A DNA stretch of 63,461 nucleotides, filler included, from Octopus bimaculoides (GCF_001194135.2; 5 parts of 5 records of this genome joined end to end with filler, not necessarily neighbours in it), one strand, 5' to 3'. Counted from the first letter of the whole stretch, positions 16,865 to 34,130 are shown. The notes: generated by a model from the letters alone, not told the origin. Numbers and translations: made by a program.

Positions 16865-16923
<59 letters not shown>

Positions 16924-17098
16924 ATGCGTGCACGCGCGTGTCTGCGTGCGCATATGTGTTTGTAAACGAAAAGCGTCAAGAAATGCCACACGAAACTATA
17001 TTGAATATTTGAAAAAAATGTACTGAAATCTTTATGCTGAAATTTTGGTATAAACGAAATGTTTATGTAACCTTTATAAAATCACTCGAAATCTCAGA

Positions 17099-17368
17099 TT
17101 ATATACATTGTTCAAATTGATTTGCCAGTTGTAAAAGGGTTATAAAAAACAGAGTTACGAAACTGATTCGGCTAATTGTACCAGCGTTGCAAAAGAATTG
17201 AATTGCTTCTAACGGCTTTGTGAGTTTGCAGTCCATAGCACGAAGACATGAAATCTTATCGCAATTGTCTTTTTCCCAGCATTTTTCCGTTTCATGCATT
17301 TTGCAATCAGCGTAAGCCGCTGTCACAACAGCAAGCAAAACCAGAACAGTTACAAAAAGTGAATTCAT
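17099..17368 (-). CDS. Uncharacterised small secreted Cys-rich protein with GPI-anchor-like C-terminus (89 aa)
   Basis: Signal peptide MNSLFVTVLVLLAVVTAAYA; six Cys spaced C-x7-C-x5-C-x4-C-x5-C-x12-C; small residues NAG, short spacer, hydrophobic ISFVTLFFITLL tail. Purine at -3; non-repetitive sequence; CRE cluster upstream. Confidence 0.8.
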   Translation of the reverse strand: MNSLFVTVLVLLAVVTAAYADCKMHETEKCWEKDNCDKISCLRAMDCKLTKPLEAIQFFCNAGTISRISFVTLFFITLLQLANQFEQCI

Positions 17369-17409
17369 TCCGAGTTTTTGATTTTCAAAGGCTTTCTTTT
17401 TTCAAAAAG

Positions 17410-17517
17410 ATTGGCTATAACTTTTGTTGCAGGCTTTTTACTTCGTCACTTTTTGGATCATACTAAGTTTGTTTACTAATCGATGACGTGATTACAATTC
17501 AGTTGGAATGACGTCAT
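17410..17517 (-). promoter_or_regulatory. Candidate proximal promoter: CCAAT plus three CRE/ATF sites
   Basis: Palindrome ATGACGTCAT 17508-17517; TGACG half-sites 17484-17488 and 17444-17448 (minus); CCAAT (minus) near 17410; 40-150 bp upstream of the ATG at 17368. Confidence 0.55.
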
Positions 17518-17775
17518 CGTGAAGAGTGATAAGATTTTTTGAGGACTGTAAACTAACAAAAACATTACAAATAAATAAATACAATACCATTGCGACGCTT
17601 CTATAATTAACGAAGCCAATTTCATAATCCTGATTCTTGTTATCTCCTAACAACCTATGAATCAGTTTGAAAAAAAAAAAAAAACATTTAAATAATTTCA
17701 TGCTGCTTAAGACTTTTATAACTTTTCACCTGTTTTTATCATAAACTTTTACCATAGAATTGTCTTCAAACTTTT

Positions 17776-17812
<37 letters not shown>

Positions 17813-17822
17813 NNNNNNNNNN

Positions 17823-17861
<39 letters not shown>

Positions 17862-18099
17862 CTCTCTCTCACTATATACATATGTATGTGTATACGCGCG
17901 TGTGTGCGTATGCGCGAATGGCTGCGTATGAATGTCGGTGCGCACGTGTGTGTGTGTGTGTGTGCGTGCGCGCGCACGCGTGTATGTTTCAACTGATAGA
18001 ACTTCAAATCTCAGACTGTAATTAATCTTGGTTCAACTATCAGGATGAAACCTTTTCACCAATAACACTTGTTATTCATTACTTAACAAACCTAGCCGC

Positions 18100-19790
18100 T
18101 ATACGAGTTGTTCTAATTTCTCTCACGTTAATCTTGAGTGAGATTAAGTCATGCGAACTTAGCAATGGTGAGAAAATAAACCACTACCTGTTTATGGATG
18201 ACTTGAAATTATTTGCCAAAAGTGAGAAAGCTTTAGACTCATTGGTCTAGACTAATTAGAGTTGTGAGTGACGACACTTGTATGAAGTTTGGAAAAGATT
18301 AGTGGGCGGTGTTATAAGGAGAAAAACTATCCAAGCCAAAAGGATTTAAATTCCCATATGAAATATTAATAAAAGCAATGAATGAAGGTAACAGTGACAA
18401 ATAGGTTCAAGAAATGAAGGAGAAGAAATGGATATTGTTGGGGAGTAAAAAAGGCGCTAACTCAAAACGGAGTAGAGAGAAAAGCATCTCTGCTGTAGGG
18501 ACATGGGTAGCGCCTTTAATACGATATTCTCTGCTTTCCTGAATTAGATTAGAGAAGAACTAAGAGACATAGACAGTTAAACTAGGAATACATTGGCCAT
18601 GTATAGATCATAACATGTTGATGGGTTTTGCTTACTACAGAAGGAAGGAAGGAGAGGACTGATATCAATAGAAGATTGCACAGAAATAGCAGGACGTGAC
18701 ATAGAAGTGTATATGAGAAATAGTAGAAAAAAACTGATTTCAGTTGCCAGAGGAGAGGAGAAAGAAACTGTGGTGACCACCAAAGAATAAAAGAAAAGAA
18801 GACAAGAGCGAGGAAGAAATATCTGGGTGGCAGGAAAGGGTTGCAAACACAGGCAAACGCAGGATACTGCAGCAGACGAAATTTTGGATATGGTTGAAGA
18901 ATAGAGATTCTAGAAAGAACCAGAAAGACTCATTATGGCTGCTAAAAGTCAGGCATTATAAACGAATGCAGCGAGCTGGCAGAATCGTTAGCACGCCGGG
19001 CGAAATGCTTAGCAGTATTTCGTCTGTCACTACGTTCTGAGTTCAAATTCTGCCGAGGTCGACTTTGCCGTTCATCCTTTCAGGGTCAATGAAATAAGTA
19101 CCAGCCAAGTGTTGCGGTTGATTTAATCGACTAGCACCCCCAACAAAAAAAATGTCAGGCCTTGTGCTTATAGTAGAAAGGATTATAAACGAATGTCATT
19201 AAGGCAAAAGATGACAACTGCGGAAAGTGTTAAGAGCAGATTGTACAACGACAAAAGATGAGTCCGATGCGCACATAATAAATAATTGTATATCTTTGGT
19301 ACATAAAGAATATAAACACCGATACAATTGAGCAGCCAAAGCATTATACTGGATATATTACATTAAAGAGATTTTGAAGTAAACAAAATGTACCAACACT
19401 AACCGGAGAGTGTGACAAAGAATGATCTGTTTAAGGTTTTATGGGACTTTACTATACAGACTAATTGAGATTCAAAAAAGACGATCAGATATTATCATTC
19501 TAGAAAGATATCAAGAGAGTGCATCCTCACAGATGCGACTGTGTGAGCTGTAGTGCTTAAAGGAAGGAAGAAATAAGAAAATATGAAGACTTAGCAAGGG
19601 AAATGCGAGGATTGTGGATGGTTTCTACAAAATTAATCCCAGTAGTTATAGACGTCCTAGGTACCGTTATCAACTGACTTAGTGGTTCCTTTACTGAGAT
19701 AGAAGTAACTACAAAAATTGCATTAATACAGAAATCTGTTCTAACAAGAAAGAGCAAGGATTGTTTCAAAGGTCCTCGAAATCTAAGGAA
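18100..19790 (+). mobile_element. Degraded R4/Dong-clade retrotransposon (RT C-terminus to RLE), interrupted by a SINE
   Basis: NHYLFMDDLKLFAK near 18180 and IRKYEDLAREMRGLW...IPVVIDVLGTV near 19570-19670. Confidence 0.8.
18969..19181 (+). mobile_element. tRNA-derived SINE (family C, Deu/Nin-like central motif), full length with TSD
   Basis: A-box-like gctggcagaatcg, B box gagttcaaatt, central ttcatcctttc.gggtc.at.aaataagtaccag; 14-bp direct repeat attataaacgaatg at 18955-18968 and 19182-19195. Confidence 0.85.
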
Positions 19791-19900
19791 ACGAGTCGAG
19801 ATGCGATATCAAGAATATTGATTCCAAATGTAACACATCTATGCACACCGTTATAGATAAATAAATATATGGATTTTATGTTTTTTTTAATTTCCAATTT

Positions 19901-20100
19901 TTTTTTACTTGTGTCAGCCATTTGACTGCGCATGCTGGAGCACCGCTTTTAGTCGAACAAATCGATCTTAGGACTTATTCTTCGTAAGTCTAGTACTTAT
20001 CCTATCGGTTTCTTTTGCCAAGCCGCGAAGTTATGGGGACGTAAACACACCAACAACGGTTGTCAAGCGTTGGTGGGGAGACAAACACAGACACACAAAC
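19901..20100 (-). mobile_element. 3' half of SINE family A
   Basis: Matches 58302-58505. Confidence 0.85.
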
Positions 20101-20132
20101 ACATACATACATACATACATACATACATTCAT

Positions 20133-20170
<38 letters not shown>

Positions 20171-20377
20171 TTGAAATTTACAAACAAACAGAAGACGAAG
20201 ACAGGTGTATAAACAACAAACAGGTGTATTAGTTTGACGTTCGGGAAGGTCAGAAAGTCTTTTACGCTCTTCAACAGACAGGAACACGATAAAATAAACA
20301 GAGAGAGAATGAATAAAGAGAGAATGAAAAGAGAGAGAATATAAAAACTTGTGGATTTAGCGGTCAATATATATATA

Positions 20378-20781
20378 TCGTAAATCTTCGAGTATAATCC
20401 GCACTTTTTCCCAAAATTTAAAGGTCAAAATTTCTAGCTCGTACTATATACGAGGTTAAAAATGAAAAATTTTCTAAGTGATAAATATGTAAAGGCAATT
20501 TACTTAATATTTATTTTTCAATGACGTTCTTACTGTTATTTCTTTATTTTCTGCAAAGTGCACAAAAAAAAGCTACACGTTTGCATTATGTTATATATAC
20601 AGTAATAATAAAGGACGTTACCGTATATACGTTTACAAACCAAGGACGTTATATTGACCTCATTGACTCAAGTTAGAGAAGGGGTGCGCATTATACACAA
20701 GATTTAAGTTTTTCAGAGGTACAGCCCCCTAAAAATCCCCTGCGTATTATACTCAAGGGCGGACTATACTCGAGGATTTAC

Positions 20782-20783
<2 letters not shown>
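20378..20783. mobile_element. Tc1/pogo-type MITE, 406 bp, TA flanks
   Basis: TIRs tcgtaaatcttcgagtataatccgc / gcggactatactcgaggatttacgg, both bounded by TA. Confidence 0.85.
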
Positions 20784-20818
<35 letters not shown>

Positions 20819-21539
20819 TAAGGGCATTATTACAGAAAATAATAACGCCACACAGTGGACTTCTCAAAATAACCACATTTAGTACCTAATGCGAGGAAAA
20901 ACAACCAACAGAAGACGACCAACTTTCTTTTAAATAAACTTAACTGTGTATCNNNNNNNNNNNNNNNNNNNNNNNNNNNNNNNNNNNNNNNNNNNNNNNN
21001 NNNNNNNNNNNNNNNNNNNNNNNNNNNNNNNNNNNNNNNNNNNNNNNNNNNNNNNNNNNNNNNNNNNNNNNNNNNNNNNNNNNNNNNNNNNNNNNNNNNN
21101 NNNNNNNNNNNNNNNNNNNNNNNNNNNNNNNNNNNNNNNNNNNNNNNNNNNNNNNNNNNNNNNNNNNNNNNNNNNNNNNNNNNNNNNNNNNNNNNNNNNN
21201 NNNNNNNNNNNNNNNNNNNNNNNNNNNNNNNNNNNNNNNNNNNNNNNNNNNNNNNNNNNNNNNNNNNNNNNNNNNNNNNNNNNNNNNNNNNNNNNNNNNN
21301 NNNNNNNNNNNNNNNNNNNNNNNNNNNNNNNNNNNNNNNNNNNNNNNNNNNNNNNNNNNNNNNNNNNNNNNNNNNNNNNNNNNNNNNNNNNNNNNNAAAT
21401 CGGCCGATACACAGTTAAGTTTATTTAAAAGAAAGTTGGTCGTCTTCTGTTGGTTGTTTTTCCTCGCATTAGGTACTAAATGTGGTTATTTTGAGAAGTC
21501 CACTGTGTGGCGTTATTATTTTCTGTAATAATGCCCTTA

Positions 21540-21574
<35 letters not shown>

Positions 21575-21738
21575 CGATGAGCTTCTTTCAGTTTCCGTCA
21601 ACCAAATCCACTCACGAGGCTTTGGACGGCCCGAGGCTATAGTAGAAGCCACTTTCCCAAGGTGCCACACAGTGGGACTAAATCCGGAACCATGTGGTTG
21701 GGAAGCAAGCTTCTTACCACACAGCCCCGCCTGCCCCT
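21575..21738 (-). mobile_element. 5' half (tRNA head plus CORE-like domain) of SINE family A
   Basis: Matches 58561-58725; contains the ccttgggaaagt CORE-like motif on the minus strand. Confidence 0.85.
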
Positions 21739-23053
21739 GTATGTATATGTTTAATAGATATACATTTTGCTGCCCCGCATAGATACACTACAGTAGATTT
21801 GGTACAAAAATTTGAGAATCAGTCCGATTAGTATCTACGTAAACAAACTCTGACGGCTCTTATGAAAAAGGAAACTAGTCGGTCTGTTCCTCACTTTTAG
21901 CTGCCGAAGCTCTTGTGCTTTGTTCACGGTATATATTTTCACAGCAAGTCAAAGTATATGTTTATTAGATATATCGCAATATAATTTCTCTTGTTTATGT
22001 ACGTGTGTGTGTAATTGCGCCTATTTGTGTATGTGTATGTGTGTGTATGTGTGCGTGTGCATGCGCGCGCGCCTGTCTCTGCGTCTTTTCTACGACCGTG
22101 GATATGTATGATTCTGTAAGAATTTTTCTTGCCCTAAAGTTACAAAACATTCTTAAAAAGAGACTATATAAAAAATAAAAAAATATCCATCATCACAGAA
22201 TAATATGTTTCGTTTGTTTATGAAAAATAAAAGGTTTCCTGTCATAGAGTTTCTTAAATGAAGTTTTCATTTGACTTTTGTCTTTAATTACTAATGGCGC
22301 CTATAAATACCCGAAAGGTTTCGTGAGTTTCAAAGGTTTTGCTTTCTCCAAGCAGGCGGCTTTATTAAAATTTTCCTTTGATGTGGTTAACAGTTTAGAA
22401 GTAGTCCGTTTCTCAGGATTTTCTAAATGTTTTAAATAAATGAGTAAACTCACAACTTTTTTTTCTCATGAAGAATATCAATTCCTTTTCTTTTGCATAT
22501 TGGTACAAGAGCTGACATTTGTAGAGAATAGTTATAAAAGACTAAATCGAAATCCAGTAAATTACTGGTATTTGTTTTATCAACCCGTAAAAAAGGAAGA
22601 AAGACATATTAAAAAAATAAACGACGTGATATAAAATAAAAGCAATTAAATAATTAAATACTGCACAGCAAGTAACATGATTCTGTTAAAAAGCTTTCAC
22701 TTTTCAGAGGTATTTGACGGTGTAAATAGAACAGGAAATACCAATTTCATTTGTTAATACCATTTTGGCCCTTACATACTAATATTAATGCTTAAGGTGT
22801 ATTTCATAGAGATACACTTCTTACTGCTTCACCATTATGTAATGAATAAATTCCTATAAAAAGATGTACTACTGTAAATACTTGTATTAATTTCTGTTGA
22901 TGGCGCTGCAATTTAAAATGATAACTTCTTGGCATCTCAAATACAACTGTCAAATCTCTAATCATATCTGAAAAATAAAAATGTCTGATTAAAAATCAGT
23001 GAATCAAAAACCAAAGTAATCTTTGTTAACTATTTGAATTTTACAACCATATA

Positions 23054-23235
23054 CTGTATTTTAACGTGTATAAGGGACCCTCATGTATAAGGACTCCCCT
23101 AATTTTTAGGACCTAAAATTTTAGAAAAAAAGGTTTTGTAAGGGATTATAATAGTATCCATGTATAAGAAACTCCCATATTTTTCTAACCTAATTTTTGA
23201 CAAAAAAGGGGTTCCTTATACACGTTAAAATGCGG
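23054..23235. mobile_element. Tc1/pogo-type MITE, 182 bp, TA flanks
   Basis: TIRs ctgtattttaacgtgtataaggga / ttccttatacacgttaaaatgcgg. Confidence 0.85.
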
Positions 23236-23636
23236 TATATCGCCTTTGGAGGCAAACTACCTCATGTCACAGACTGTTCGTATTTTGGATGTGACTTGTC
23301 AGACAGTAGAGATATTCCTGGACTCCAGAAGTCAAGAAGGCGGAATACTGGATTGAGCAATATTTTCACGAATTGGTTTGCATTAGGTGTAACAAGAGGA
23401 AAGTGTATCGAGTGACATCAGGGTGCAAGCAAGGTACAGATTGGAAGTTTAGAATATTAAAAGACTTGTTGCCGTCGCAGTTAATCGAGACAAGAGAGAG
23501 GAGAGAAGGAGAGAAAGAGAAAGAGGAATGTGTATGCGTGTGTGTGTGTGTGTGTATAATTTAGATTTCGCTCAGGTATAGCAATACTAATAATTTGTTG
23601 TTAGAACTCAAATTCAGTATCATATAATTATATTGT

Positions 23637-23885
23637 GTGGAGGCGCGTGGCCTAGCGGTTAGGGTGTCAGCACCATGATATAAGATTGTGGTTTCGATTC
23701 CTGGACCGGGTGACGCGTTGTGTTCTTGAGCAAAACATTTCATTTCACGTTGCTCCAGTCCACTCAGCTGGCAAAAATAAGTAACGCTGCGATGGACTGG
23801 CGTCCCGTTCAGCTGGGGAACACATACGCCATTGAAACCGGGAAACCGGGCCCATGAGTCTGGCTAGGCTTTAAAAGGGCGCATT
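23637..23885 (+). mobile_element. tRNA-derived CORE-type SINE (family D)
   Basis: A box tggcctagcgg, B box ggtttcgattcc, then gttcttgagcaaaaca CORE-like segment. Confidence 0.8.
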
Positions 23886-23939
23886 TATTTTATATTTTTT
23901 ACGTATGTATGTTTTATCTTTGAGTTTAATTTAAGTTCT

Positions 23940-25600
23940 TCTTGAGAGAGTTCAAGCCGGTTGCTAACAAAGCGGCAAAACATTTTGAGTTAAGAGTATG
24001 TGTGGGAACCTGAATATCTAGAAGAAGATAGATGAGGAATAAATTCGCAAAGTACGTGCAGTGTGAAGTTGGCTGCAAAGTGGTTAGCGGAGGCGGAAGT
24101 TTTCGCCACGAAGATACTGCTCATAGAAATTTCGGTGTCGTGAAGTTACTACATAGCTGCTTCGGAGATTGAGTTTTTGCTAAGTACGAGATGTGAAAGG
24201 ATTTATTGAAAAGAATAGTTTCAGTCACTCACCTAATTTTGACGTGTTAGGAGTGAAGCACACATACTGCCAAAGGGTAGTTGGCATAAGACTGGCGGAG
24301 CTCTGGTCAATCGGTTGACTTGAGGAAGGTACCATAGCATACAGGGCTGAGGGAGCGTTATGTGTTATGTTGATGCATGTTGGGTAATTGCGATGAGGTA
24401 GTTATCGAACGACCCTATAATTGCAGAGACAAATTACAGTAAGGTAAAGATTAAGCCTGGAGTTGAGAAAGATATCAATGGTGTTTGCGGCATCATTGTG
24501 TCGATCTGGGAGGCACACACGAACGTGAGTAGCACTGGGGCTTTGTTAAGCGTCAGCAACTTTTGAGATCTATTATATGTACATTCGCTGTCCTTTGCCA
24601 TTATCGTTGGTGTCCCAACGTGGTTTGAGTTAAGGCTATTGATGCTGTAGCCGTTTCCGTGTGCGCGCTCTCATTTTCTCTGCTGATTGGAGACTATAAG
24701 ACTTTTAGATTAGTGTTGTAATAGAGTGCAGAGGTATTACTGCAGATGTGCCAGCAGGTTTAAAGATAACTGCGTATATAGTAGAGGGTATTCTTTTGGT
24801 TTAGAGTTTTCTACACGTTGTCCTTTAAATATTCAGTTGGTCCTTCATTATTAGTATTCTGGTGGCCTTCTTAGTCTGAAGCGACCAAAAGTATATTTTA
24901 CCACTTGGCATATGCGTATGAAAGACAAAAACCTGGAAAGGTTGAAGAAGATAGTGAGTTGTGAAGGCGAATGAAGTCTTTCTCCGCTGAGATATTGCTC
25001 ACAGAACTATCGCTGGTGTAAAGTAGAAAGCTAGAGATTTCTGCAAAGTTGGCGGATATCCCTTTGGTAAAGGAGCAACAGGACCAGCTATAGTCTTGGA
25101 AGACTTGAACTAAGGTTACTGATACTATAAATATTCCTTCCTTCCTTCCTTCCTTCCGTCCTTCCTTCCTTCCTTCCTTCATTCCTTTCTTTCTTTTTTC
25201 TCCCTCCTCTCTGTTTATATGCAGTTTCTGTTGACTGAGGAGCGATAATGTTTTTAGGATAGTGTTGTAGGAGACCTGAGTGTAGTTGCAGATGTGTCTG
25301 GGCATTTAAAATATAATTGCGTATTTTGGCTAGAGTTTTCTAGGACAACAAACTTTTCTTCAAATGTCCAGTTTGCTATTCATCTCTCAATATTTTGTTT
25401 CGTTGCATAGATGATCTCTGACTTTTGCCCGAGTGCAACCAAAAAAGAAACAAAATAGTCTTTTTTTGAGTTACTTGCTGTCCATTGAGATTTGTTGCAG
25501 AGGGATTTAAGAAATAGACAGGGTAAGTAATGAACTTGATACCGTAAGTTCAGTACTTAAAATACAATAAAGTAATAAATATATAATTAAATCAAGTTAA
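23940..25600 (-). mobile_element. Heavily decayed LINE-like fragment (possible ORF1/APE remains)
   Basis: Only short protein-like runs with many stops; (GGAA)n inserted at ~25135-25190. No diagnostic motif secure. Confidence 0.3.
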
Positions 25601-25739
25601 GTGTTGGTAAATTGATATAGGAATTATAAAGAAATGTTTGTTCACGTTAAAGCAGCTGCAGTAGTACTTATTGACAGCCGAGTGTGTTCCTGTCAGTTTC
25701 TTATTTTACAACAGCAAAAACAACAATAATCGAACAAGT

Positions 25740-25768
25740 AATAATAATACTAACTATAACAACAACAG

Positions 25769-25867
<99 letters not shown>

Positions 25868-25883
25868 CAACAACAGCAACAAC
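25740..25883. repeat. (AAC)n/(AAT)n microsatellite
   Basis: Direct reading. Confidence 0.95.
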
Positions 25884-26880
25884 TCAATAGGCATGATGGA
25901 TCAGCACAATATATTCACTTGGTAATTTGCAAAAACCTGAACCTGCCCCATGAAATTACTGATAAATGGCAAGAAAAACCTCTCAGTGGCAAATACCCGA
26001 AGAGAGCTAATAGTGCCGAGATTGACAAAGCCCTTACCCATCAATGGTCAGTGTCTTCTGGCTTAAAATCAGAAACAGAAGGGTTTACCATAGCATCCCA
26101 AGATCAATGCCTACCTACAAGAAACTACCAGGCCAACATATTAAAGAACGGCAGCTTCCCAACATGTCATGTATGTCAACAACAAAATGAAACCATTGAT
26201 CATGTTATCTCCATGTGCAGTCTTCTTGCGCCTACAGAGTATCTCAACAGGCATGATAGAGCAGCACAGTATATTCACAGGNNNNNNNNNNNNNNNNNNN
26301 NNNNNNNNNNNNNNNNNNNNNNNNNNNNNNNNNNNNNNNNNAGGGTAATTTGCAAAAACCTGGACCTGCCCCATGATAAAAACTGGTGGGAACACAAACC
26401 ACCACCAGTGCTTAAAAATGATCACATCTCACTCCTCTGGAACTTCACCATTCAAACTGACAGAACGACAGCTTCGAATAGGCCAGACATAGTATTGAAA
26501 GACTTCAGACAAAAATCATGCCTCCACATTGATATGACTGTCCCAATCGACATAAATGTATCTGTCAAGACCTACCAAAAACTGAGCAAGTACAACAATC
26601 TTGAAATAGAAATTGGCAAAATGTGGAACCTCAAGACTAAAACAATACCTGTTGTCATAGGTGCCCTAAGAATGATAGCAAAAGGGGATGATTGCTACCT
26701 AGCTCAGATACCAGGAAACCCCAAAATAGTAGAAATTCAAAAGATAGTTCTAATGGGAACTACCCATATCCTACGTAAAATACTGTCTGTGTAATTTCAA
26801 ATTTTAAAACAAACTCATAATTTTTTTATGTTTTCTTAAACACTCTCCAGAACAATACTATGTGCAAAACCAAATATATG
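25884..26880 (+). mobile_element. 5'-truncated R4/Dong-clade retrotransposon (zinc knuckle plus RLE endonuclease)
   Basis: ETEGFTIASQDQCLPTRNY; CHVCQQQNETIDHVISMC (CCHC); RHD; NRPDIVLKD...IDMTVP...KLSKY...IPVVIGAL. Confidence 0.92.
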
Positions 26881-27029
26881 ACACCCTATTAATTAGTTTA
26901 AATATGTCCAAACACATATAAATATTACTTGATGCTATTAAACATTCTAAAATACTGTTAAAGCATTTACAAAGTGAAAATATAGAAGCCCGGACATTAC
27001 TTATGGGATGACCTGATAGTAACTCCTTT

Positions 27030-28760
27030 GACTGTAGACACAAGGCCTGAAATTTTGTGGGAGGGGTTAGCTGATTACTTCGGTGAAATTTGAACTCAGA
27101 GTGCAAATAGACAGAAGAAATACCATAAGTAATATTTTCCGACGTTATAGCGATTCTGCCAATCCACCGCTCTTTTAAATGGTTCCTGATTTCGGCACAA
27201 AACCAGGAGATCTGAGGCAAAAGGATTAGTCAATACCGTCGACCTAAGTGCTTAAACTTTGATTCTTATTTTAACGCCACTAAAAAGGATGAATGCTAAA
27301 GTTGAACTCAATGCTATTTGAAATACGTATGAAAAGTGCCGAAAGAAATACTGGAAAGCGTTTCATCCAATGCCTTACTGATTTTACTACCTCGAGGCTT
27401 TTAATGATGGTTTCTTCTATATGCACAGTCCTGAAAGTCTTTATAGGGAGGGGGATAGTCGATAACATTCACCCCAATGTTCAACTGGTACCTATTTATT
27501 GACCTCGAAAGGATGAAAAGTAAAGGCTACCCCGGCAGAATTTGAACTTAGAATGTAAAACCGGAAGAAGTGCCTGTATGCATTTTGTTCAAAGTTCAAA
27601 TTCTGCCGGGGTAGCCTTTATTTTTCATCCTTTCGAGGTCAATAAATAGGTACCAGTTGAACATTGGGGTGAATGTTATCGACTATCCCCCTCCCTATAA
27701 AGACTTTCAGGACTGTGCATATAGAAGAAACCATCATTAAAAGCCTCGAGGTAGTAAAATCAGTAAGGCATTGGATGAAACGCTTTCCAGTATTTCTTTC
27801 GGCTCTTTTCATACTTATTTCAAATAGCATTGAGTTCAACTTTAGCATTCATCCTTTTTAGTGGCGTTAAAATACGTGCTAACAATACTGTTAGCTCACC
27901 GCCTTCGCCACTTTTGGTAAACCATCCTACTACAGACACAAGGCCTGAAACTTGGGGGAGGGGATAGTTGATTTCATCGACCCCAGTGTTTCACTAGTAC
28001 TTCATTTATCGACCCCGAAAGGATATAGGGTAAAGCTGACCTCGGCGGAATTTGAACTGAGAACGTAAAGACGGGTGACATACCGCTAAGCATTTTGCTC
28101 GGCGTACTAACGATTCTATCAGCTCGCTGCCTTTCTACCACTTTTAATAATAGTTTCCAATTTTGCCACAAGGGCAGCAATTTGTTGGAAGAGGATGAGT
28201 CGATTACATCGACTCTAGTACCCAACTGGTACTTAATTTATCAACCCAAAGTCAACCTCGGCGGAATTTGAACTCAGAACGAAATACCACTAAGCATTTC
28301 GCCCGGCGTGCTAACATTTCTGCCAGCTCGCCGCCTCCCGTCACTTTTAATAATAACAATGATTTGTCATAGACAGAAGAGCCAACATTTCGAGGAGGCG
28401 TATGGATGGCTGAAACGAACCCAGGCTACATCTGATAATTGTTTCATTGGTCTATGAGAGAAGAAAAGTATCGAAGAAAAAACGACTATAGGATTTTAAC
28501 ACGAACGATGCCTCGAATAATTTGGACTAAGTCTCTATCCGTAGTAACTTCCATCACTTCATCTCTTAAAAAAAAGTAAGAACTCTATATTGCACTACAT
28601 TTTGAAACACCTAATCATACCCACATACCTGGTACTTGGTTACTTTATTTTATACTTTATTTTATTGACCCCCAAAAGGATGCAAGAAAAAGTTGATTAC
28701 GGCTGAAATCAAAACCAATGACTGCGAAAGAATTAGTCCGACACCCCAATGATTCTGGTA
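27030..28760 (-). mobile_element. Cluster of at least four SINE family C copies or fragments
   Basis: Recurrent reverse-complemented B box (gaatttgaact.aga) at ~27085, 27540, 28050 and 28265, and the acaaggcctgaaa tail motif. Confidence 0.8.
27267..27874. repeat. Near-perfect 283-bp inverted repeat with 42-bp spacer
   Basis: 27267-27549 vs 27592-27874, about 3 mismatches by eye, no N gap. Confidence 0.95.
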
Positions 28761-29217
28761 TTCTAGTATACATAACCCCTTAACCTAACTAAACATTGTC
28801 GTCAAAACCAATAGTTTATTACACAGCACGTAAAGATCTGAACACCACCACAAAAATTTTGAACGCAGTCCTTTAAATGACTTAAATTATTAAATAAAAA
28901 TTGAATCACTAGAATTTATTAGTAAATTGATATATCAATTATAAGCAAATTTGTTTTAATATAACGTGACGTAATTGGTGAGCCACTTTTTTTCCAGCTG
29001 CACTGCTACCACCACCGCCGCCGTACTTATATTCAAATAAACGTAAAGGCCCTTCACAGAAGTAAATTTTTGTTACCCTAATTAAAACAAATAACAATAA
29101 TACACTTCAAAATACATAACAAAAAAATTATAACCCCTCACAATTAATCAAGATATTCCTAACTTTATAAATTTCATCTCCATTATCTTTATGCTCTCAT
29201 CCTTGCATCTAATAATA

Positions 29218-29248
<31 letters not shown>

Positions 29249-29301
29249 CAATAATAATGATAATACAGTTCTATACCACTACGCCATATGCCCCCCCCCC
29301 C

Positions 29302-29531
29302 GGCCTGTGGCGTAATGGTTAAGAGCGCGGGCTACTAACTTCAAGATTCCGAGTTCGATTCCAAGCAGTGTCATGAATAATAATAATAACGATAATAATA
29401 ATAATGATAGTAATAATAACATCGAAAAATACCTTAGGAATGAGAACCCAGATTCGAAATTTCCCCAAGGCATCTGATGAAAGCTGGAGGGTATATCAAC
29501 CGAAACGTTGTGTTAACAACAAATAAGATGA
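29302..29531 (+). mobile_element. tRNA-headed element: Pol III boxes, (AAT)n, hammerhead-like motif; truncated by gap
   Basis: A box TGGCGTAATGG 29308-29318, B box GTTCGATTCC 29353-29362; CTGATGA 29474-29480 and GAAACGT-T 29502-29509. Confidence 0.65.
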
Positions 29532-30004
29532 NNNNNNNNNNNNNNNNNNNNNNNNNNNNNNNNNNNNNNNNNNNNNNNNNNNNNNNNNNNNNNNNNNNNN
29601 NNNNNNNNNNNNNNNNNNNNNNNNNNNNNNNNNNNNNNNNNNNNNNNNNNNNNNNNNNNNNNNNNNNNNNNNNNNNNNNNNNNNNNNNNNNNNNNNNNNN
29701 NNNNNNNNNNNNNNNNNNNNNNNNNNNNNNNNNNNNNNNNNNNNNNNNNNNNNNNNNNNNNNNNNNNNNNNNNNNNNNNNNNNNNNNNNNNNNNNNNNNN
29801 NNNNNNNNNNNNNNNNNNNNNNNNNNNNNNNNNNTATCTGGAAATACGGGCGCTCCGTTCACCGTCTCTAAACAAACCTTATTCAGGGACCTTTTGAGCG
29901 GGATGGGTTACTCGACCTGAAGGAAATTGTAACTGACGAGTACATTGGGCTTTGTATATTTGTACCCCAGTGTCACTTTGATGGCATGCGCTGCTCTCTC
30001 ACTC

Positions 30005-30060
<56 letters not shown>

Positions 30061-30099
30061 GTTCTTTCGCTATTGGCCACAAAGCCTGAAAAATACTTA

Positions 30100-31070
30100 G
30101 GACAATATAAAGACAAAGACAGTGGGGACATAGATAAACATGTGTAAACAATATAAAAACAGTAACACTCAACATGAAACTTATACTAACAACATCTTTA
30201 AAAGCAGAGAAACGCCACCCTGGGGCAACTAAGGAACCACACAGATTCGAGCCACCCTACTCACTGGGAGTACTATAGCAAGTGCTATTCTCTTCTCTGT
30301 ACTCCTCAGGTAATAGACGCTAGCTTACAGTAGGCCCACTTGGACCGTACTCACCATATCAACCCACCTTTCAATAAATTTACAGCTCATCTCTTTCCAC
30401 TCACACTTTCCTTTTGAAATGGAATCTTAAAAAGCCGATGAGAGCTTGGCACAAGAGGAAAGTATCTTCTTTCGCCAAAAGCACTAGAAAGAGGGAAATT
30501 GCTAGCCCTTCCCGACCACGTGAAAGTGGCGAGACGATCTTCACTATGGTATTGGTCAATAAGTGGATCCGTTTTACGCGTGAGAGCAGCAGTTCGACAT
30601 GAAAGTCAGCAATGCTCGAGCACCTTACGAGCGACTGCAAGATAGTCTCCTTGCTCTGGTGCATCTCCAAGTGACTCGACTAATGGCACTACTATACCAG
30701 TACACTTTATCTTGAATAGTCAATAGTCCTCGGTAGCTCTGCCTTGTTAGAGATTTCTGGAAATTATCTGAGGGCTCCGGAGCAAAAGTCCTCCGGAAAA
30801 GACCAGCCAGTTGATTTTCAGCGACATCTAGATTTTTCCCGAAGACCTAGTCAATTTATCCACCATAATCTTCTATAGAACGCTATGGTGAAACTAACTG
30901 CATTGCTCGACTCGCAGAGGGGTGTGAGCACCTGATGACACTAAAAATGCCAGGTTCTCTGCATCTGTGTACGCCTGATACAAGGTTGCAGCTCTGTCAA
31001 ATGGACGAGTTTCAGAAAAGCGCGTCTAACAAACGGTGACCACATCTGCTTAGCGTTGAGAAAAAGCTGG
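30100..31070 (-). mobile_element. Degraded L1/Tx1-clade ORF2 C-terminal fragment
   Basis: LFRRTFAPEPSDNFQKSL...LTIQDKVY..., zinc-knuckle remnant ETILQSLVRC, and FLRFHFKRKV; frameshifted. Confidence 0.7.
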
Positions 31071-33099
31071 AAATGTCTTAGACCCAGCGCATATCTGTGC
31101 ATCACTAGCCTCATCATGTATGTATGTATATATATATACAAATAGTAAATGAGTATATGCATATATACGTACAGGTATGTGCATACCGACATCCACCTGT
31201 ATGTATAGGTGCATATCTGGGTACAGGACATTGCAAACAAAACGTAGACGAGAAAACACACAAGCCACATAGAAAACATTCTACTCCATCAGCTACCCCC
31301 GTTTTAACACCGGCGTTTCGAAGAGCTGGGCAGGACGCATCGTTAAAACGGCTCTTCCCATGGACCGCAACTTAAATTTGTATACACAAATTAAATCTTG
31401 CCATGGAGGAATGTAGTGGCGGACAAAAAACAAGACAGGAAAACAAACAGAAAAGGCTTNNNNNNNNNNNNNNNNNNNNNNNNNNNNNNNNNNNNNNNNN
31501 NNNNNNNNNNNNNNNNNNNNNNNNNNNNNNNNNNNNNNNNNNNNNNNNNNNNNNNNNNNNNNNNNNNNNNNNNNNNNNNNNNNNNNNNNNNNNNNNNNNN
31601 NNNNNNNNNNNNNNNNNNNNNNNNNNNNNNNNNNNNNNNNNNNNNNNNNNNNNNNNNNNNNNNNNNNNNNNNNNNNNNNNNNNNNNNNNNNNNNNNNNNN
31701 NNNNNNNNNNNNNNNNNNNNNNNNNNNNNNNNNNNNNNNNNNNNNNNNNNNNNNNNNNNNNNNNNNNNNNNNNNNNNNNNNNNNNNNNNNNNNNNNNNNN
31801 NNNNNNNNNNNNNNNNNNNNNNNNNNNNNNNNNNNNNNNNNNNNNNNNNNNNNNNNNNNNNNNNNNNNNNNNNNNNNNNNNNNNNNNNNNNNNNNNNNNN
31901 NNNNNNNNNNNNNNNNNNNNNNNNNNNNNNNNNNNNNNNNNNNNNNNNNNNNNNNNNNNNNNNNNNNNNNNNNNNNNNNNNNNNNNNNNNNNNNNNNNNN
32001 NNNNNNNNNNNNNNNNNNNNNNNNNNNNNNNNNNNNNNNNNNNNNNNNNNNNNNNNNNNNNNNNNNNNNNNNNNNNNNNNNNNNNNNNNNNNNNNNNNNN
32101 NNNNNNNNNNNNNNNNNNNNNNNNNNNNNNNNNNNNNNNNNNNNNNNNNNNNNNNNNNNNNNNNNNNNNNNNNNNNNNNNNNNNNNNNNNNNNNNNNNNN
32201 NNNNNNNNNNNNNNNNNNNNNNNNNNNNNNNNNNNNNNNNNNNNNNNNNNNNNNNNNNNNNNNNNNNNNNNNNNNNNNNNNNNNNNNNNNNNNNNNNNNN
32301 NNNNNNNNNNNNNNNNNNNNNNNNNNNNNNNNNNNNNNNNNNNNNNNNNNNNNNNNNNNNNNNNNNNNNNNNNNNNNNNNNNNNNNNNNNATTTTGTTCG
32401 CCTTTGCGTTTTGAGTTCAAATTCTGCCGGGGTCGACTTTGCGTTTCATCCTCTTGGGTTCGATAAAATAAAAAGATGTAATCGACTTGTCCCTTCCCAC
32501 TCAAATTTCTATCCCTGTGCCTATAATAGAAATGATTAATCTTGTAGCTGTTGTTTTGGTTTAGCTCTAAGCAAATCATGATTGAAGGTTCCATGCAATG
32601 TGTATACTCCCTTTTCAAAACGATGAAATGTAGTTTGACAGAGATTTTACTGAAGTTTCCATCAGGTCTCACGACCATATGGGAGCTCCTTGGTTGGCTC
32701 GTGGTTTTGTTTTACGAGTTGAAGGCATGTGTACATATACTAGCGTAAGTTGAATGCTGTCAAGCAGCTACATAGACTCCTGCATATATCTGTACGTATA
32801 TGTGTATATATGGCTATGTGTAGATACGATTACACACACACACACACACACATGAATGTAAGTGTGTGTGTGTGTGTGTGTGCGTGCGCGTATGTTTGTG
32901 TGTACATATATGCGTGCATGTGTGTGTATGTTTATAGACATGTGGTTTCATACAAACTCAAAAAGCATGAGGGTCACTCTTGAATGGGGAAAGAGAACAC
33001 ATTCCCGCATGCAATGCACGCATACAGGAATACGTCATTGTTACATCACGTACACGCCATTTATTCATATATGTATGGACATGTATATATGCATACATG

Positions 33100-33131
<32 letters not shown>

Positions 33132-34130
33132 AACACACATATATACATACATATATATGTATATATATGTATGNNNNNNNNNNNNNNNNNNNNNNNNNNN
33201 NNNNNNNNNNNNNNNNNTTAATTAATTAANNNNNNNNNNNNNNNNNNNNNNNNNNNNNNNNNNNNNNNNNNNNACTTCTTTTCATGTTTCTTCCGGTCTT
33301 TCCATGCATTGAATTCATTACACAGCTGATAGCAGTGTATTTTATGACTATGGCCTTATCTGCTGATAGCCTCAAAAATAATATCCTTCCAGATAAACTT
33401 GTGTTAATAGTCCCAAAGACAGAAACCAAATGGTCTCCATAATACAACCACAATTTCTAATGCTATGTCAAATGGCTGATTCACAGTTTATGCCAAGACA
33501 TATTTTCCAAGTCACTATAGATTCATCTTATCCGCAAAACACTTTCACATTTTGTTGTGTCTGGGGAAAGTCATTCTTATTACTGATTTGATTTCCACTC
33601 ATTTACTTATTTATTTTTTCTAAAATTTTCATTACATATTGCAATCTTTTCAATAGTTGTTGACTATCCGTTATCAGAGCTGCGTTCATTTTGTGTGCTT
33701 GTTTGTGTGCATGTGTATACACATATGTATGTATGTCTGTATGCATGTATATATGCATGTATGTATGCCTGTATGTGTATGCATATATCTATGTATGCAT
33801 GTGTACGTTTGTATGTATGTATGCATTCTGCATATTCATGTTTGTGCGTGTGTGTATTTTTGTGTTTCCCTCTGTCTCCTTGTGTGTGTCTATGTGTATG
33901 GGTTTGTGTGACTATGTATGTGCATCTGTTATGTATGGATGTGTGTCTCCATATGTGTCCTTGTATGTGTGTGTGTGTGTGTGTGTGAAGTGTGCATGTA
34001 TGTCTTTGGTCATGTGTTTCAGTCTGCATTTATGTATGTGTGCATGAGCTTGTCTGTCCATATTACCTATGTACCCATCTATCTGTTTACTTACATATCC
34101 ATTTATCTACACACACATATATATATATAT

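What the first reader, a model, noticed from the sequence alone, without database searches (positions are those of the whole stretch)
17099..17517. Unrecognised micro-gene: secreted 6-Cys peptide with GPI-like tail behind a CRE cluster
Seen: an intact 89-codon ORF in non-repetitive DNA with a clear signal peptide, a ~40-aa domain DCKMHETEKCWEKDNCDKISCLRAMDCKLTKPLEAIQFFC, an omega-site-like NAG and a 12-residue hydrophobic tail. Upstream lie a perfect ATGACGTCAT palindrome, two TGACG half-sites and CCAAT. Known: CRE clusters mark cAMP/activity-inducible promoters, and neuritin/CPG15 is an activity-induced, GPI-anchored, 6-Cys helical protein. Inference: a very compact, possibly activity-regulated cell-surface ligand family; I recognise no family with this Cys spacing. 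It sits ~41 kb from noggin, and any functional link is speculative.
Basis: partly seen in the sequence, partly recalled or inferred. Interest (0 to 1): 0.85.

Follow-up and report, generated by a model that had tools for sequence, protein, structure and literature searches.

The report
Unannotated small secreted octopus gene
The 89-codon reading frame is very probably a real but unannotated octopus gene for a tiny secreted, six-cysteine, probably lipid-anchored surface protein, with one uncharacterised relative in Octopus bimaculoides; the suggested likeness to neuritin and control by nerve activity have no support.

Summary
The motif cluster upstream of it is also there.

The ORF alone could be chance. 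A Markov null gives about 0.5 ORFs per Mb with a signal peptide and at least 6 Cys. An exhaustive HMMER search of 1.84 billion proteins found one full-length homologue, a 90-aa "Uncharacterized protein" of Octopus bimaculoides (UniRef A0A0L8GFZ5, 36% identity). It shares the start, the signal peptide, all six cysteines at nearly the same spacing, a C-[NS]-A-G motif and a hydrophobic tail ending in LLQLAN. Neutral drift to that divergence would almost never keep this.

So this is an unannotated, single-coding-exon member of a small family seen so far only in octopus. A GPI anchor is plausible but was not tested with a predictor.

No Pfam, PDB-sequence or Foldseek relative was found, so membership of neuritin, Ly6 or attractin is not supported.

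The TGACG cluster is non-random (P about 0.002 across the piece). However, two of its sites lie in a 17-nt inverted repeat, and a decayed inverted copy of the gene's 3' half lies just beyond it (17543-17674). Promoter function, activity regulation, expression and orthologues could not be tested here.

The parts
17099..17368 (-). Complete coding sequence of 89 codons plus the stop codon TAA at 17099-17101, with no intron
   Evidence: It is colinear over its full length with the 90-aa O. bimaculoides protein A0A0L8GFZ5.
17309..17368 (-). Signal peptide, aa 1-20 (MNSLFVTVLVLLAVVTAAYA). Predicted cleavage is AYA|DC
   Evidence: Read from the sequence: an uncharged hydrophobic core with small residues at -1 and -3. 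It is 50% identical to the paralogue's MKSLIVIAVVLLATATVVYS, which has S at -1 and V at -3. No SignalP was available.
17180..17308 (-). Mature domain, aa 21-63. Six Cys with spacing C-x7-C-x5-C-x4-C-x5-C-x12-C, followed by N-A-G
   Evidence: All six Cys align with the paralogue, whose spacing is 7-6-4-5-12. AlphaFold2 on the domain alone gives three helices at pLDDT 81.5 in the best model; the other four models score 37-54.
17102..17179 (-). C-terminal tail, aa 64-89: spacer TISRIS, hydrophobic FVTLFFITLLQLA, then NQFEQCI. Candidate GPI-attachment signal with omega at N61, or alternatively a propeptide
   Evidence: The tail-only alignment to the paralogue scores 42, above the maximum of 40 in 20000 shuffles, and LLQLAN is identical. 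The 7th Cys (C88) lies in this tail and is absent from the paralogue.
17508..17517 (.). Perfect palindrome ATGACGTCAT, a full CRE/ATF-type site, at -140 to -149 from the ATG
   Evidence: one match against 0.17 expected in the window.
17483..17491 (+). ATGACGTGA, matching 7 of 8 positions of the CRE. It also fits the TGACGTG(G/A) type of site bound by XBP1/ATF6/CREB3-like factors (my own knowledge)
17444..17448 (-). TGACG half-site on the gene strand, followed by aagTAAAAAG, which is TATA-like at best
17410..17414 (-). CCAAT on the gene strand, only 42-46 nt before the ATG
   Evidence: This is too close to the ATG for a classical -60 to -100 CCAAT box unless the 5' UTR is very short (inference).
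17481..17519 (.). 17-nt inverted repeat, arms 17481-17497 and 17503-17519, 88% complementary, 5-nt spacer. It contains both ATGACGT sites
17543..17674 (+). Decayed inverted partial copy of the gene's 3' half (aa 45-87), possibly starting at 17525. It has a frameshift and an in-frame stop
   Evidence: tblastn gives DCKLTKTLQINKY and IQYHCDASIINEANFIILILVIS*QPMNQ in two frames. The DNA is 73% identical over 123 aligned nt. Its local score is 38, against a null of 11.5 +/- 1.6 (maximum 21 in 2000) and a maximum of 16 elsewhere in the piece.

Best explanation
Window 17099-17368 (minus strand) is an unannotated protein-coding gene with one coding exon. It belongs to a small family seen so far only in Octopus bimaculoides.

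Shown here:
- Homology to a second locus over the whole length.
- A pattern of conservation that only a translated, constrained sequence would give.

Inferred mechanism:
1. The 89-aa precursor enters the ER through a 20-aa signal peptide, cleaved at AYA|DC.
2. The roughly 40-aa domain folds into three short helices held by three disulfides.
3. The C-terminal 26-28 residues act as a GPI-attachment signal. Omega is N61, with A at omega+1 and G at omega+2, followed by a 6-residue spacer and a 13-residue hydrophobic stretch.
4. The tail is exchanged for a GPI anchor, leaving a very small disulfide-stapled domain on the outer face of the cell membrane.
5. There it would act as a surface ligand or co-receptor, or as a shed factor once released.

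Both targeting ends are better conserved than the non-Cys part of the mature domain, so the exposed surface evolves fast. Transcription probably starts within about 150 nt upstream. It may use the cluster of CRE/ATF-type bZIP sites, but which factor binds and which stimulus acts are unknown.
For: Homologue:
- phmmer against 1.84 billion representative proteins gives one genuine hit, P0003. It is a single domain, query 1-86 to target 1-87, E 7.8e-6 for the whole library.
- P0003 is UniRef A0A0L8GFZ5, an 'Uncharacterized protein' of Octopus bimaculoides.
- The alignment has 31 invariant columns. These include M1, all six Cys, A62-G63 and LLQLAN, with a single one-codon gap.
- The alignment score is 130. 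Shuffles that keep the composition of the signal, domain and tail segments give 32.7 +/- 7.3, and 0 of 5000 reach the observed score. The tail alone beats all 20000 shuffles.

Constraint:
- Simulated neutral substitution to about 37% aa identity keeps the frame open in 0.65% of trials and all six Cys in 0.1%. Both were kept in 0 of 20000 trials.
- A neighbouring inverted copy of the 3' half has picked up a frameshift and a stop, while the gene stayed intact.

Identity by segment (counted):
- Signal peptide: 10 of 20.
- Tail: 9 of 26.
- Mature domain: 12 of 43, of which only 6 of 37 outside the Cys.

Other points:
- The precursor has 7 Cys, but the seventh is in the tail, so the mature domain has an even six.
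- AlphaFold2 predicts three helices for the domain.
- The TGACG cluster is denser than chance, P about 0.002 across the piece.
- The piece is probably O. bimaculoides. A retrotransposon-tail ORF in it hits O. bimaculoides proteins at 80-87% identity.
Against: - No transcript evidence could be consulted.
- No orthologue from another cephalopod was found, although no cephalopod genome could be searched at the DNA level.
- The only homologue is itself a predicted, uncharacterised model. It was listed only under UniRef and MetaClust.
- Because that homologue is in a protein database, its being an open frame is not independent evidence.
- No GPI or signal-peptide predictor was available. The hydrophobic stretch is short (13 and 11 residues) and is followed by 7 polar residues. 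LLQLAN is more conserved than a generic GPI signal needs to be.
- There is no canonical AATAAA or ATTAAA in the 234 nt between the stop and the piece edge. Only TATAAA and CATAAA variants are present.
- There is no canonical TATA box.
- Four of the five AlphaFold2 models are of low confidence.
Confidence: 0.65

Rival explanations
1. It is a real gene, but the product is a soluble secreted peptide of the pheromone, antimicrobial or toxin type. The hydrophobic C-terminal tail would be a conserved propeptide or sorting segment removed by proteolysis, not a GPI signal.
For: - The signal peptide and tail are conserved while the mature region is hypervariable apart from a fixed Cys framework. This is the pattern known from conotoxin and antimicrobial-peptide precursors (my own knowledge).
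- The exact LLQLAN conservation goes beyond the purely physicochemical needs of a GPI signal.
- Seven polar residues follow the hydrophobic stretch in both proteins.
Against: - There is no dibasic or other obvious processing site between C60 and the tail.
- N/S-A-G directly after the last Cys, a short polar spacer and a hydrophobic stretch near the C-terminus fit the omega, omega+1, omega+2 rule in both paralogues (the rule is my own knowledge).
- The unpaired C88 sits in the part a transamidase would remove.
Confidence: 0.2
2. It is not a functional gene. It would be either a chance ORF or a recently silenced copy, and the similarity to A0A0L8GFZ5 would reflect two copies of a duplicated non-coding or dead segment that happen to be open.
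For: - ORFs of this length and general look are expected by the hundred to the thousand in a gigabase AT-rich genome.
- The protein is absent from all annotation-derived collections searched.
- The locus shows duplication debris.
- No canonical poly(A) signal or TATA box is seen.
Against: - At 36% identity, neutral copies would not keep the frame, the start, nearly the same length (89 against 90 aa) and all six Cys. The joint probability is below 1 in 20000 in simulation.
- The truly neutral copy next door is already broken at 73% DNA identity.
Confidence: 0.1
3. The ORF belongs to a mobile or foldback element. The 130-nt inverted arms (17108-17234 and 17543-17674) would be terminal inverted repeats, and the 'family' would be copies of the element.
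For: - Inverted arms of about 130 nt at 73% identity enclose about 310 nt.
- The piece is rich in repeats and retrotransposon remains.
Against: - Only one relative exists among 1.84 billion proteins. The retrotransposon ORF in the same piece returns dozens of O. bimaculoides entries.
- There is no other copy in the piece.
- One arm lies inside a frame whose protein-level conservation extends well outside the arm.
Confidence: 0.04

Closest known systems
UniProt/UniRef A0A0L8GFZ5_OCTBM, an 'Uncharacterized protein' of Octopus bimaculoides, 90 aa
   Same: Homologous over the full length: signal peptide, six Cys at nearly the same spacing, C-[NS]-A-G, and a hydrophobic tail with LLQLAN. The length is 89 against 90 aa.
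   Different: Only 36% identical overall, and 6 of 37 outside the Cys in the mature domain. It has a one-residue insertion before Cys3 and no seventh Cys. It is annotated, whereas the window's gene is not. Neither has a known function, a Pfam domain or a name.
Neuritin/CPG15
   Same: By inference only: a small, signal-peptide-bearing, six-Cys, probably helical protein with a GPI-type C-terminus.
   Different: - No sequence relationship. Pfam gave no neuritin hit at E up to 10, and no neuritin appeared among the HMMER hits.
- The domain is about half the size.
- The Cys spacing differs (neuritin spacing from memory, not tested).
- Activity-dependent expression is untested here.
Ly6/uPAR three-finger GPI-anchored proteins (CD59, PSCA, Lynx1)
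   Same: The last Cys is followed directly by Asn and small residues, then a short spacer and a hydrophobic GPI signal. It is also a very small ectodomain (my own knowledge of that family).
   Different: Six Cys rather than 8-10, no CC doublet, predicted all-helical rather than beta three-finger, and no Pfam UPAR_LY6 hit.
Small helical disulfide-stapled mollusc pheromones such as Aplysia attractin
   Same: A mollusc protein of 40-60 aa with a six-Cys, predicted helical domain (lead from memory).
   Different: No hit to any solved structure by sequence profile or by fold, no Pfam hit, different Cys spacing, and attractin has no hydrophobic C-terminal tail.

Membership tests
Octopus A0A0L8GFZ5-like family (unnamed, uncharacterised) | Significant full-length sequence homology with the same start and end | tested here: met
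   One domain, 1-86 to 1-87, E 7.8e-6 against 1.84e9 proteins. Segment-preserving shuffles: 0 of 5000 reach the observed score.
Octopus A0A0L8GFZ5-like family (unnamed, uncharacterised) | Shared six-Cys framework, C-[NS]-A-G and an LLQLAN tail | tested here: met
   Invariant columns C22, C30, C36, C41, C47, C60, A62, G63 and L78-N83. Spacings are 7-5-4-5-12 against 7-6-4-5-12.
Neuritin/CPG15 | Match to the neuritin sequence family | tested here: not met
   The Pfam scan at E up to 10 returned only a sub-threshold, unrelated HOCHOB hit. There was no neuritin among the exhaustive HMMER hits.
Neuritin/CPG15 | Activity-induced or cAMP-induced transcription | not testable with these tools
   No transcript or expression data were available. 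CRE-type motifs are present but do not show inducibility.
Ly6/uPAR | 8-10 Cys with a C-terminal CCxxxxCN motif, a three-finger beta fold and a Pfam UPAR_LY6 match | tested here: not met
   Six Cys and no CC doublet, predicted all-helical, no Pfam hit.
GPI-anchored proteins (class) | An N-terminal signal peptide plus a C-terminal signal made of small omega/omega+1/omega+2 residues, a polar spacer and a hydrophobic stretch | tested here: inconclusive
   - By inspection both paralogues fit: N-A-G or S-A-G, a spacer of 6-8 residues, and a hydrophobic run of 13 or 11.
- Seven polar residues follow the hydrophobic run.
- No trained predictor (NetGPI, PredGPI, big-PI) was available.
GPI-anchored proteins (class) | Experimental lipid anchoring (PI-PLC release, detergent partitioning) | not testable with these tools
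   This needs an experiment.
CREB-target (cAMP-responsive) promoters | A full CRE within about 200 bp of the TSS, usually with a downstream TATA box | tested here: inconclusive
   A full CRE lies 140-149 nt before the ATG and the TGACG cluster has P about 0.002. The TSS is unknown and there is no canonical TATA box. Two of the sites form an inverted repeat.
Attractin-type mollusc pheromones | Sequence or fold match to attractin | tested here: not met
   No Pfam hit. The PDB profile searches returned only spurious repeat-summed lectin hits and a hit at E 0.77. Foldseek against the PDB returned nothing.

The most novel reading that the evidence does not exclude
The two proteins found a cephalopod-restricted family of unusually small (about 40-residue) GPI-anchored, three-helix, three-disulfide surface proteins with a fold that has no solved relative. 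Their exposed face evolves fast. In this reading the window's copy is switched on through a CREB/ATF-type site cluster, for example in neurons or secretory cells, as a lineage-specific cell-surface signalling or recognition molecule.
Probability: 0.1. Interest if true: 0.6.

Novelty: new member of a known kind. Interest (0 to 1): 0.35.

Why it matters
This is a concrete example of a short, intronless, lineage-restricted gene that standard annotation missed, in a genome where cephalopod-specific genes are of interest for nervous-system and body-plan novelties.

If it is expressed and GPI-anchored, it would be among the smallest folded GPI-anchored ectodomains known, and it belongs to a family with no described fold or function. 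On present evidence it is an ordinary kind of orphan small secreted cysteine-rich gene. Its value is mainly as an annotation correction and as a candidate for expression screening.

Tried and rejected
- **Word-indexed search of 5.8 billion proteins and exact look-up with the ORF.** Nothing was found. The same search with P0003 returned only itself, and its genomic locus is not on record.
- **P0001 and P0002, the top two HMMER hits.** Rejected as artefacts. They are tandem-repeat proteins whose scores are sums of 4-7 weak stretches, with best single-stretch E of 4.8e4 and 1.8e5. The same artefact explains the PDB lectin hits.
- **Pfam.** Only a sub-threshold HOCHOB hit at 14.1 bits against a cut-off of 26.3, and nothing for P0003.
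- **Structure.** The full-length AlphaFold2 model was poor, pLDDT 61.5. The domain-only model was better but inconsistent between models. Foldseek against the PDB gave nothing usable.
- **JGI metagenome scan for relatives.** None found.
- **CRE region as a decayed N-terminal half of a head-to-head inverted full-length copy.** Tested and not supported: the alignment of ORF nt 1-135 to 17391-17542 is no better than shuffles.
- **Codon-position bias of gene-versus-relic mismatches.** Flat at 15, 15 and 11, so uninformative.
- **CpG-island test.** Negative.
- **Rfam.** No RNA family anywhere in the piece.
- **Bacterial promoter and terminator scan.** Irrelevant to an animal genome.
- **Literature.** No paper mentions A0A0L8GFZ5. 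Keyword searches found nothing on such a family. The octopus genome paper is not held.
- **Identifying the species behind ENA contigs that carry related retrotransposon ORFs.** Only anonymous assembly accessions were returned.

Full report
**1. The observation**

The piece (16865-33173) is AT-rich animal DNA. It is 37.5% G+C, has 1748 N in assembly gaps, and carries many microsatellites.

- **The ORF.** On the minus strand an ATG at 17368 opens an 89-codon frame that ends with TAA at 17099-17101. M1 is the first start codon after the upstream in-frame stop.
- **The motifs on the gene strand upstream.**
  - CCAAT at 17414-17410.
  - TGACG at 17448-17444.
  - ATGACGTGA at 17483-17491 on the plus strand.
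  - The perfect palindrome ATGACGTCAT at 17508-17517.

**2. Is it more than chance?**

The ORF by itself is not.
- In 20 Mb generated by a third-order Markov model of this piece, ATG-started ORFs of at least 80 aa occur about 300 times per Mb.
- Those with a signal-peptide-like start occur about 4 times per Mb.
- Those with in addition at least 6 Cys after the signal occur about 0.5 times per Mb.
- That makes such an ORF unlikely in one 16-kb piece, but expected many hundreds of times in a gigabase genome. A scan of many windows would meet such ORFs by chance.

The motifs are mixed.
- A single TGACGTCA is also unremarkable: 0.17 are expected in the window, and 15% of shuffles have one.
- The cluster of four TGACG hits within 73 nt is unusual. 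It was reached in 4 of 2000 Markov resamplings of the whole piece.

**3. The decisive evidence: a full-length homologue**

The word-indexed search of 5.8 billion proteins found nothing, and the exact sequence is not on record. The gene is therefore not in the annotation-derived collections available here.

The exhaustive HMMER search of 1.84 billion representatives gave three hits.
- Two of them (P0001, P0002) are tandem-repeat proteins. Their scores are sums of many individually meaningless stretches, with best single-stretch E of 1.8e5 and 4.8e4. I reject them.
- The third, P0003, is a 90-aa protein matched in one stretch from residue 1 to 87 (E 7.8e-6 for the whole library). It is UniRef A0A0L8GFZ5, an 'Uncharacterized protein' of Octopus bimaculoides.

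The alignment reads:

MNSLFVTVLVLLAVVTAAYADCKMHETEKCWEKDN-CDKISCLRAMDCKLTKPLEAIQFFCNAGTISRISFVTLFFITLLQLANQFEQCI

MKSLIVIAVVLLATATVVYSNCLGTIKDNCINKATVCRQIKCLLESSCPIPDMLKTFTSKCSAGSAVSFSYKTLIVLVLLQLANYLKNYF

- The start, the signal peptide, all six Cys, the A-G after the last Cys and the motif LLQLAN coincide. There is one single-codon gap.
- The score is 130. Shuffles that keep the composition of the signal, domain and tail separately give 32.7 +/- 7.3, and 0 of 5000 reach the observed score.
- The mature domain alone reaches its score in 39 of 20000 shuffles. The tail alone reaches it in none.

A simulation of neutral substitution in the ORF to the same amino-acid identity (about 37%) gave these results:

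| Outcome | Frequency |
|---|---|
| Met and open frame kept | 0.65% of trials |
| All six Cys kept | 0.1% of trials |
| Both kept | 0 of 20000 trials |

One caveat applies. A database protein is open by construction, so openness of P0003 is not independent evidence. The Cys framework, the colinearity and the shared ends are independent.

I conclude that both loci have been under selection as translated sequence. Because the genomic ORF is colinear with the whole paralogue, the hydrophobic tail is coding sequence and not intron read-through, and the coding sequence has no intron.

**4. Source organism**

A retrotransposon-tail ORF in the same piece (25919-26794, weak zf-RVT) has its best hits among O. 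bimaculoides UniRef proteins at 80-87% identity. The piece is therefore most probably O. bimaculoides. The window's gene is then an unannotated paralogue of A0A0L8GFZ5 at 36% identity, not its orthologue.

**5. Anatomy of the protein**

- **aa 1-20, signal peptide.** It has a hydrophobic core, with A or S at -1 and A or V at -3 in the two proteins.
- **aa 21-63, mature domain.** The Cys spacing is C-x7-C-x5-C-x4-C-x5-C-x12-C, followed by N-A-G (S-A-G in the paralogue).
- **aa 64-89, tail.** It consists of a polar spacer, an 11-13 residue hydrophobic run, and 7 polar residues.

Other points follow.
- The seventh Cys (C88) is in the tail and is absent from the paralogue, so the mature domain keeps an even six.
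- AlphaFold2 on the domain alone predicts three helices (residues 4-11, 15-24 and 31-40). The best model has pLDDT 81.5, but the other four have 37-54. The full-length model is poor at 61.5.
- Identity by segment is 10 of 20 in the signal, 9 of 26 in the tail, and only 6 of 37 at non-Cys positions of the mature domain. Both targeting ends are conserved while the exposed surface diverges fast.

**6. Mechanism**

- **Preferred reading (inference from the rules for GPI signals, my own knowledge).** Omega, omega+1 and omega+2 are N/S-A-G, followed by a spacer and a hydrophobic stretch that is too short for a membrane span. This leads to transamidation and GPI anchoring of a tiny disulfide-stapled helical domain on the cell surface. 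Known GPI signals such as those of Thy-1 and placental alkaline phosphatase also end with a few polar residues, so the 7-residue polar end does not exclude this reading.
- **Main rival.** The product is a soluble secreted peptite precursor with a conserved C-terminal propeptide. This fits the 'conserved ends, hypervariable core' pattern and the unexpectedly exact LLQLAN.
- No predictor or experiment was available to decide between the two.

**7. The upstream region**

The motif cluster is statistically real. Three things temper the promoter reading.
1. The two ATGACGT sites form a 17-nt inverted repeat (17481-17497 and 17503-17519, 88% complementary, 5-nt spacer). They are therefore not independent occurrences.
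2. Immediately beyond, at 17543-17674 on the plus strand (possibly from 17525), lies a decayed inverted copy of the gene's own 3' half (aa 45-87).
   - It is 73% identical over 123 nt.
   - It has a 5-nt insertion that shifts the frame, and TTACAA has changed to TAACAA, giving a stop.
   - Its score is 38, against a null of 11.5 +/- 1.6 and a maximum of 16 elsewhere in the piece.
   - The locus has thus undergone a local inverted duplication whose junction abuts the CRE palindrome.
   - I tested whether 17391-17542 is the decayed N-terminal half of that copy. It is not detectably so.
3. There is no canonical TATA box. CCAAT is only 42-46 nt from the ATG, and the TSS is unknown.

TGACGTCA-type sites are bound by CREB, ATF and CREB3-like factors alike. 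The second site, TGACGTGA, also fits the XBP1/ATF6/CREB3 type (my own knowledge). 'Activity-regulated' is therefore only one of several possibilities. The region is not a CpG island.

**8. Comparison with known families**

- No Pfam family matches either protein.
- No solved structure matches by sequence profile or by fold.
- No relative was found in JGI metagenomes.
- Neuritin, Ly6/uPAR and attractin-type pheromones each fail a tested membership criterion. The likeness to neuritin is limited to the generic description 'small, six Cys, helical, GPI-like'.
- The only family it belongs to is the unnamed one defined by A0A0L8GFZ5.

**9. Verdict**

- It is a real, previously unannotated small gene (about 0.85).
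- It encodes a secreted six-Cys mini-protein.
- GPI anchoring is plausible (about 0.5).
- A functional bZIP-site promoter is possible (about 0.35).
- A neuritin-like, activity-regulated ligand is unsupported (0.1 or less).
- Lineage-restricted orphan cysteine-rich secreted genes are common in animal genomes, so the surprise value is modest.
- Expression, orthologues and anchoring remain to be tested with data and tools not available here.

Noticed in passing
window 17543-17674 (+), possibly from 17525: A decayed inverted partial copy of the gene's 3' half (aa 45-87). It is 73% identical at the DNA level, has a frameshift and a stop, and ends in an A15 run. It shows a local inverted duplication at this locus.
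   Followed up: yes
window 17481-17519: A 17-nt inverted repeat with a 5-nt spacer whose arms each carry ATGACGT. The 'CRE cluster' is therefore partly one palindromic unit.
   Followed up: partly
window 25919-26794 (+): A 291-codon ORF, interrupted by an N gap, that encodes the C-terminal tail of a non-LTR retrotransposon ORF2 (weak zf-RVT). Its best hits are many O. bimaculoides proteins at 80-87% identity. CpG o/e here is very low, 0.14-0.3.
   Followed up: partly
window 18968-19097, 27495-27650, 28279-28334, 32391-32471: Copies, in both orientations, of a short interspersed repeat sharing GTTCAAATTCTGCCG...GTCGACTTTGC, at 65-91% identity. It is probably a SINE-like element.
   Followed up: no
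window 27267-27553 / 27588-27874 and 20783-20952 / 21406-21575: Two near-perfect inverted repeats. One is 287 nt at 99% complementarity with a 34-nt spacer. The other is 170 nt at 100% and flanks an N gap. They look like assembly artefacts or very young foldback structures.
   Followed up: no
window 16865-16921, 17779-17862, 17945-17965, 25760-25880, 30004-30060: Microsatellites bracket the gene ((TG)n and (CT)n), and there are long (AAT)n and (AAC)n runs elsewhere. The (CT)n run is broken by a 10-N gap.
   Followed up: no
proteins P0001, P0002 and PDB 7e7u/7e7n: Tandem-repeat proteins reach apparently significant whole-sequence E-values against this short Cys-rich query by summing many weak stretches. 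This is a trap for automated family assignment.
   Followed up: yes
loci L001-L005 (ENA assemblies ERZ25333528, ERZ25067561, ERZ25878469): Contigs labelled as metagenome assemblies, up to 0.9 Mb long, carry retrotransposon ORFs 54-64% identical to the one in this piece. They are evidently from an unidentified animal host.
   Followed up: no
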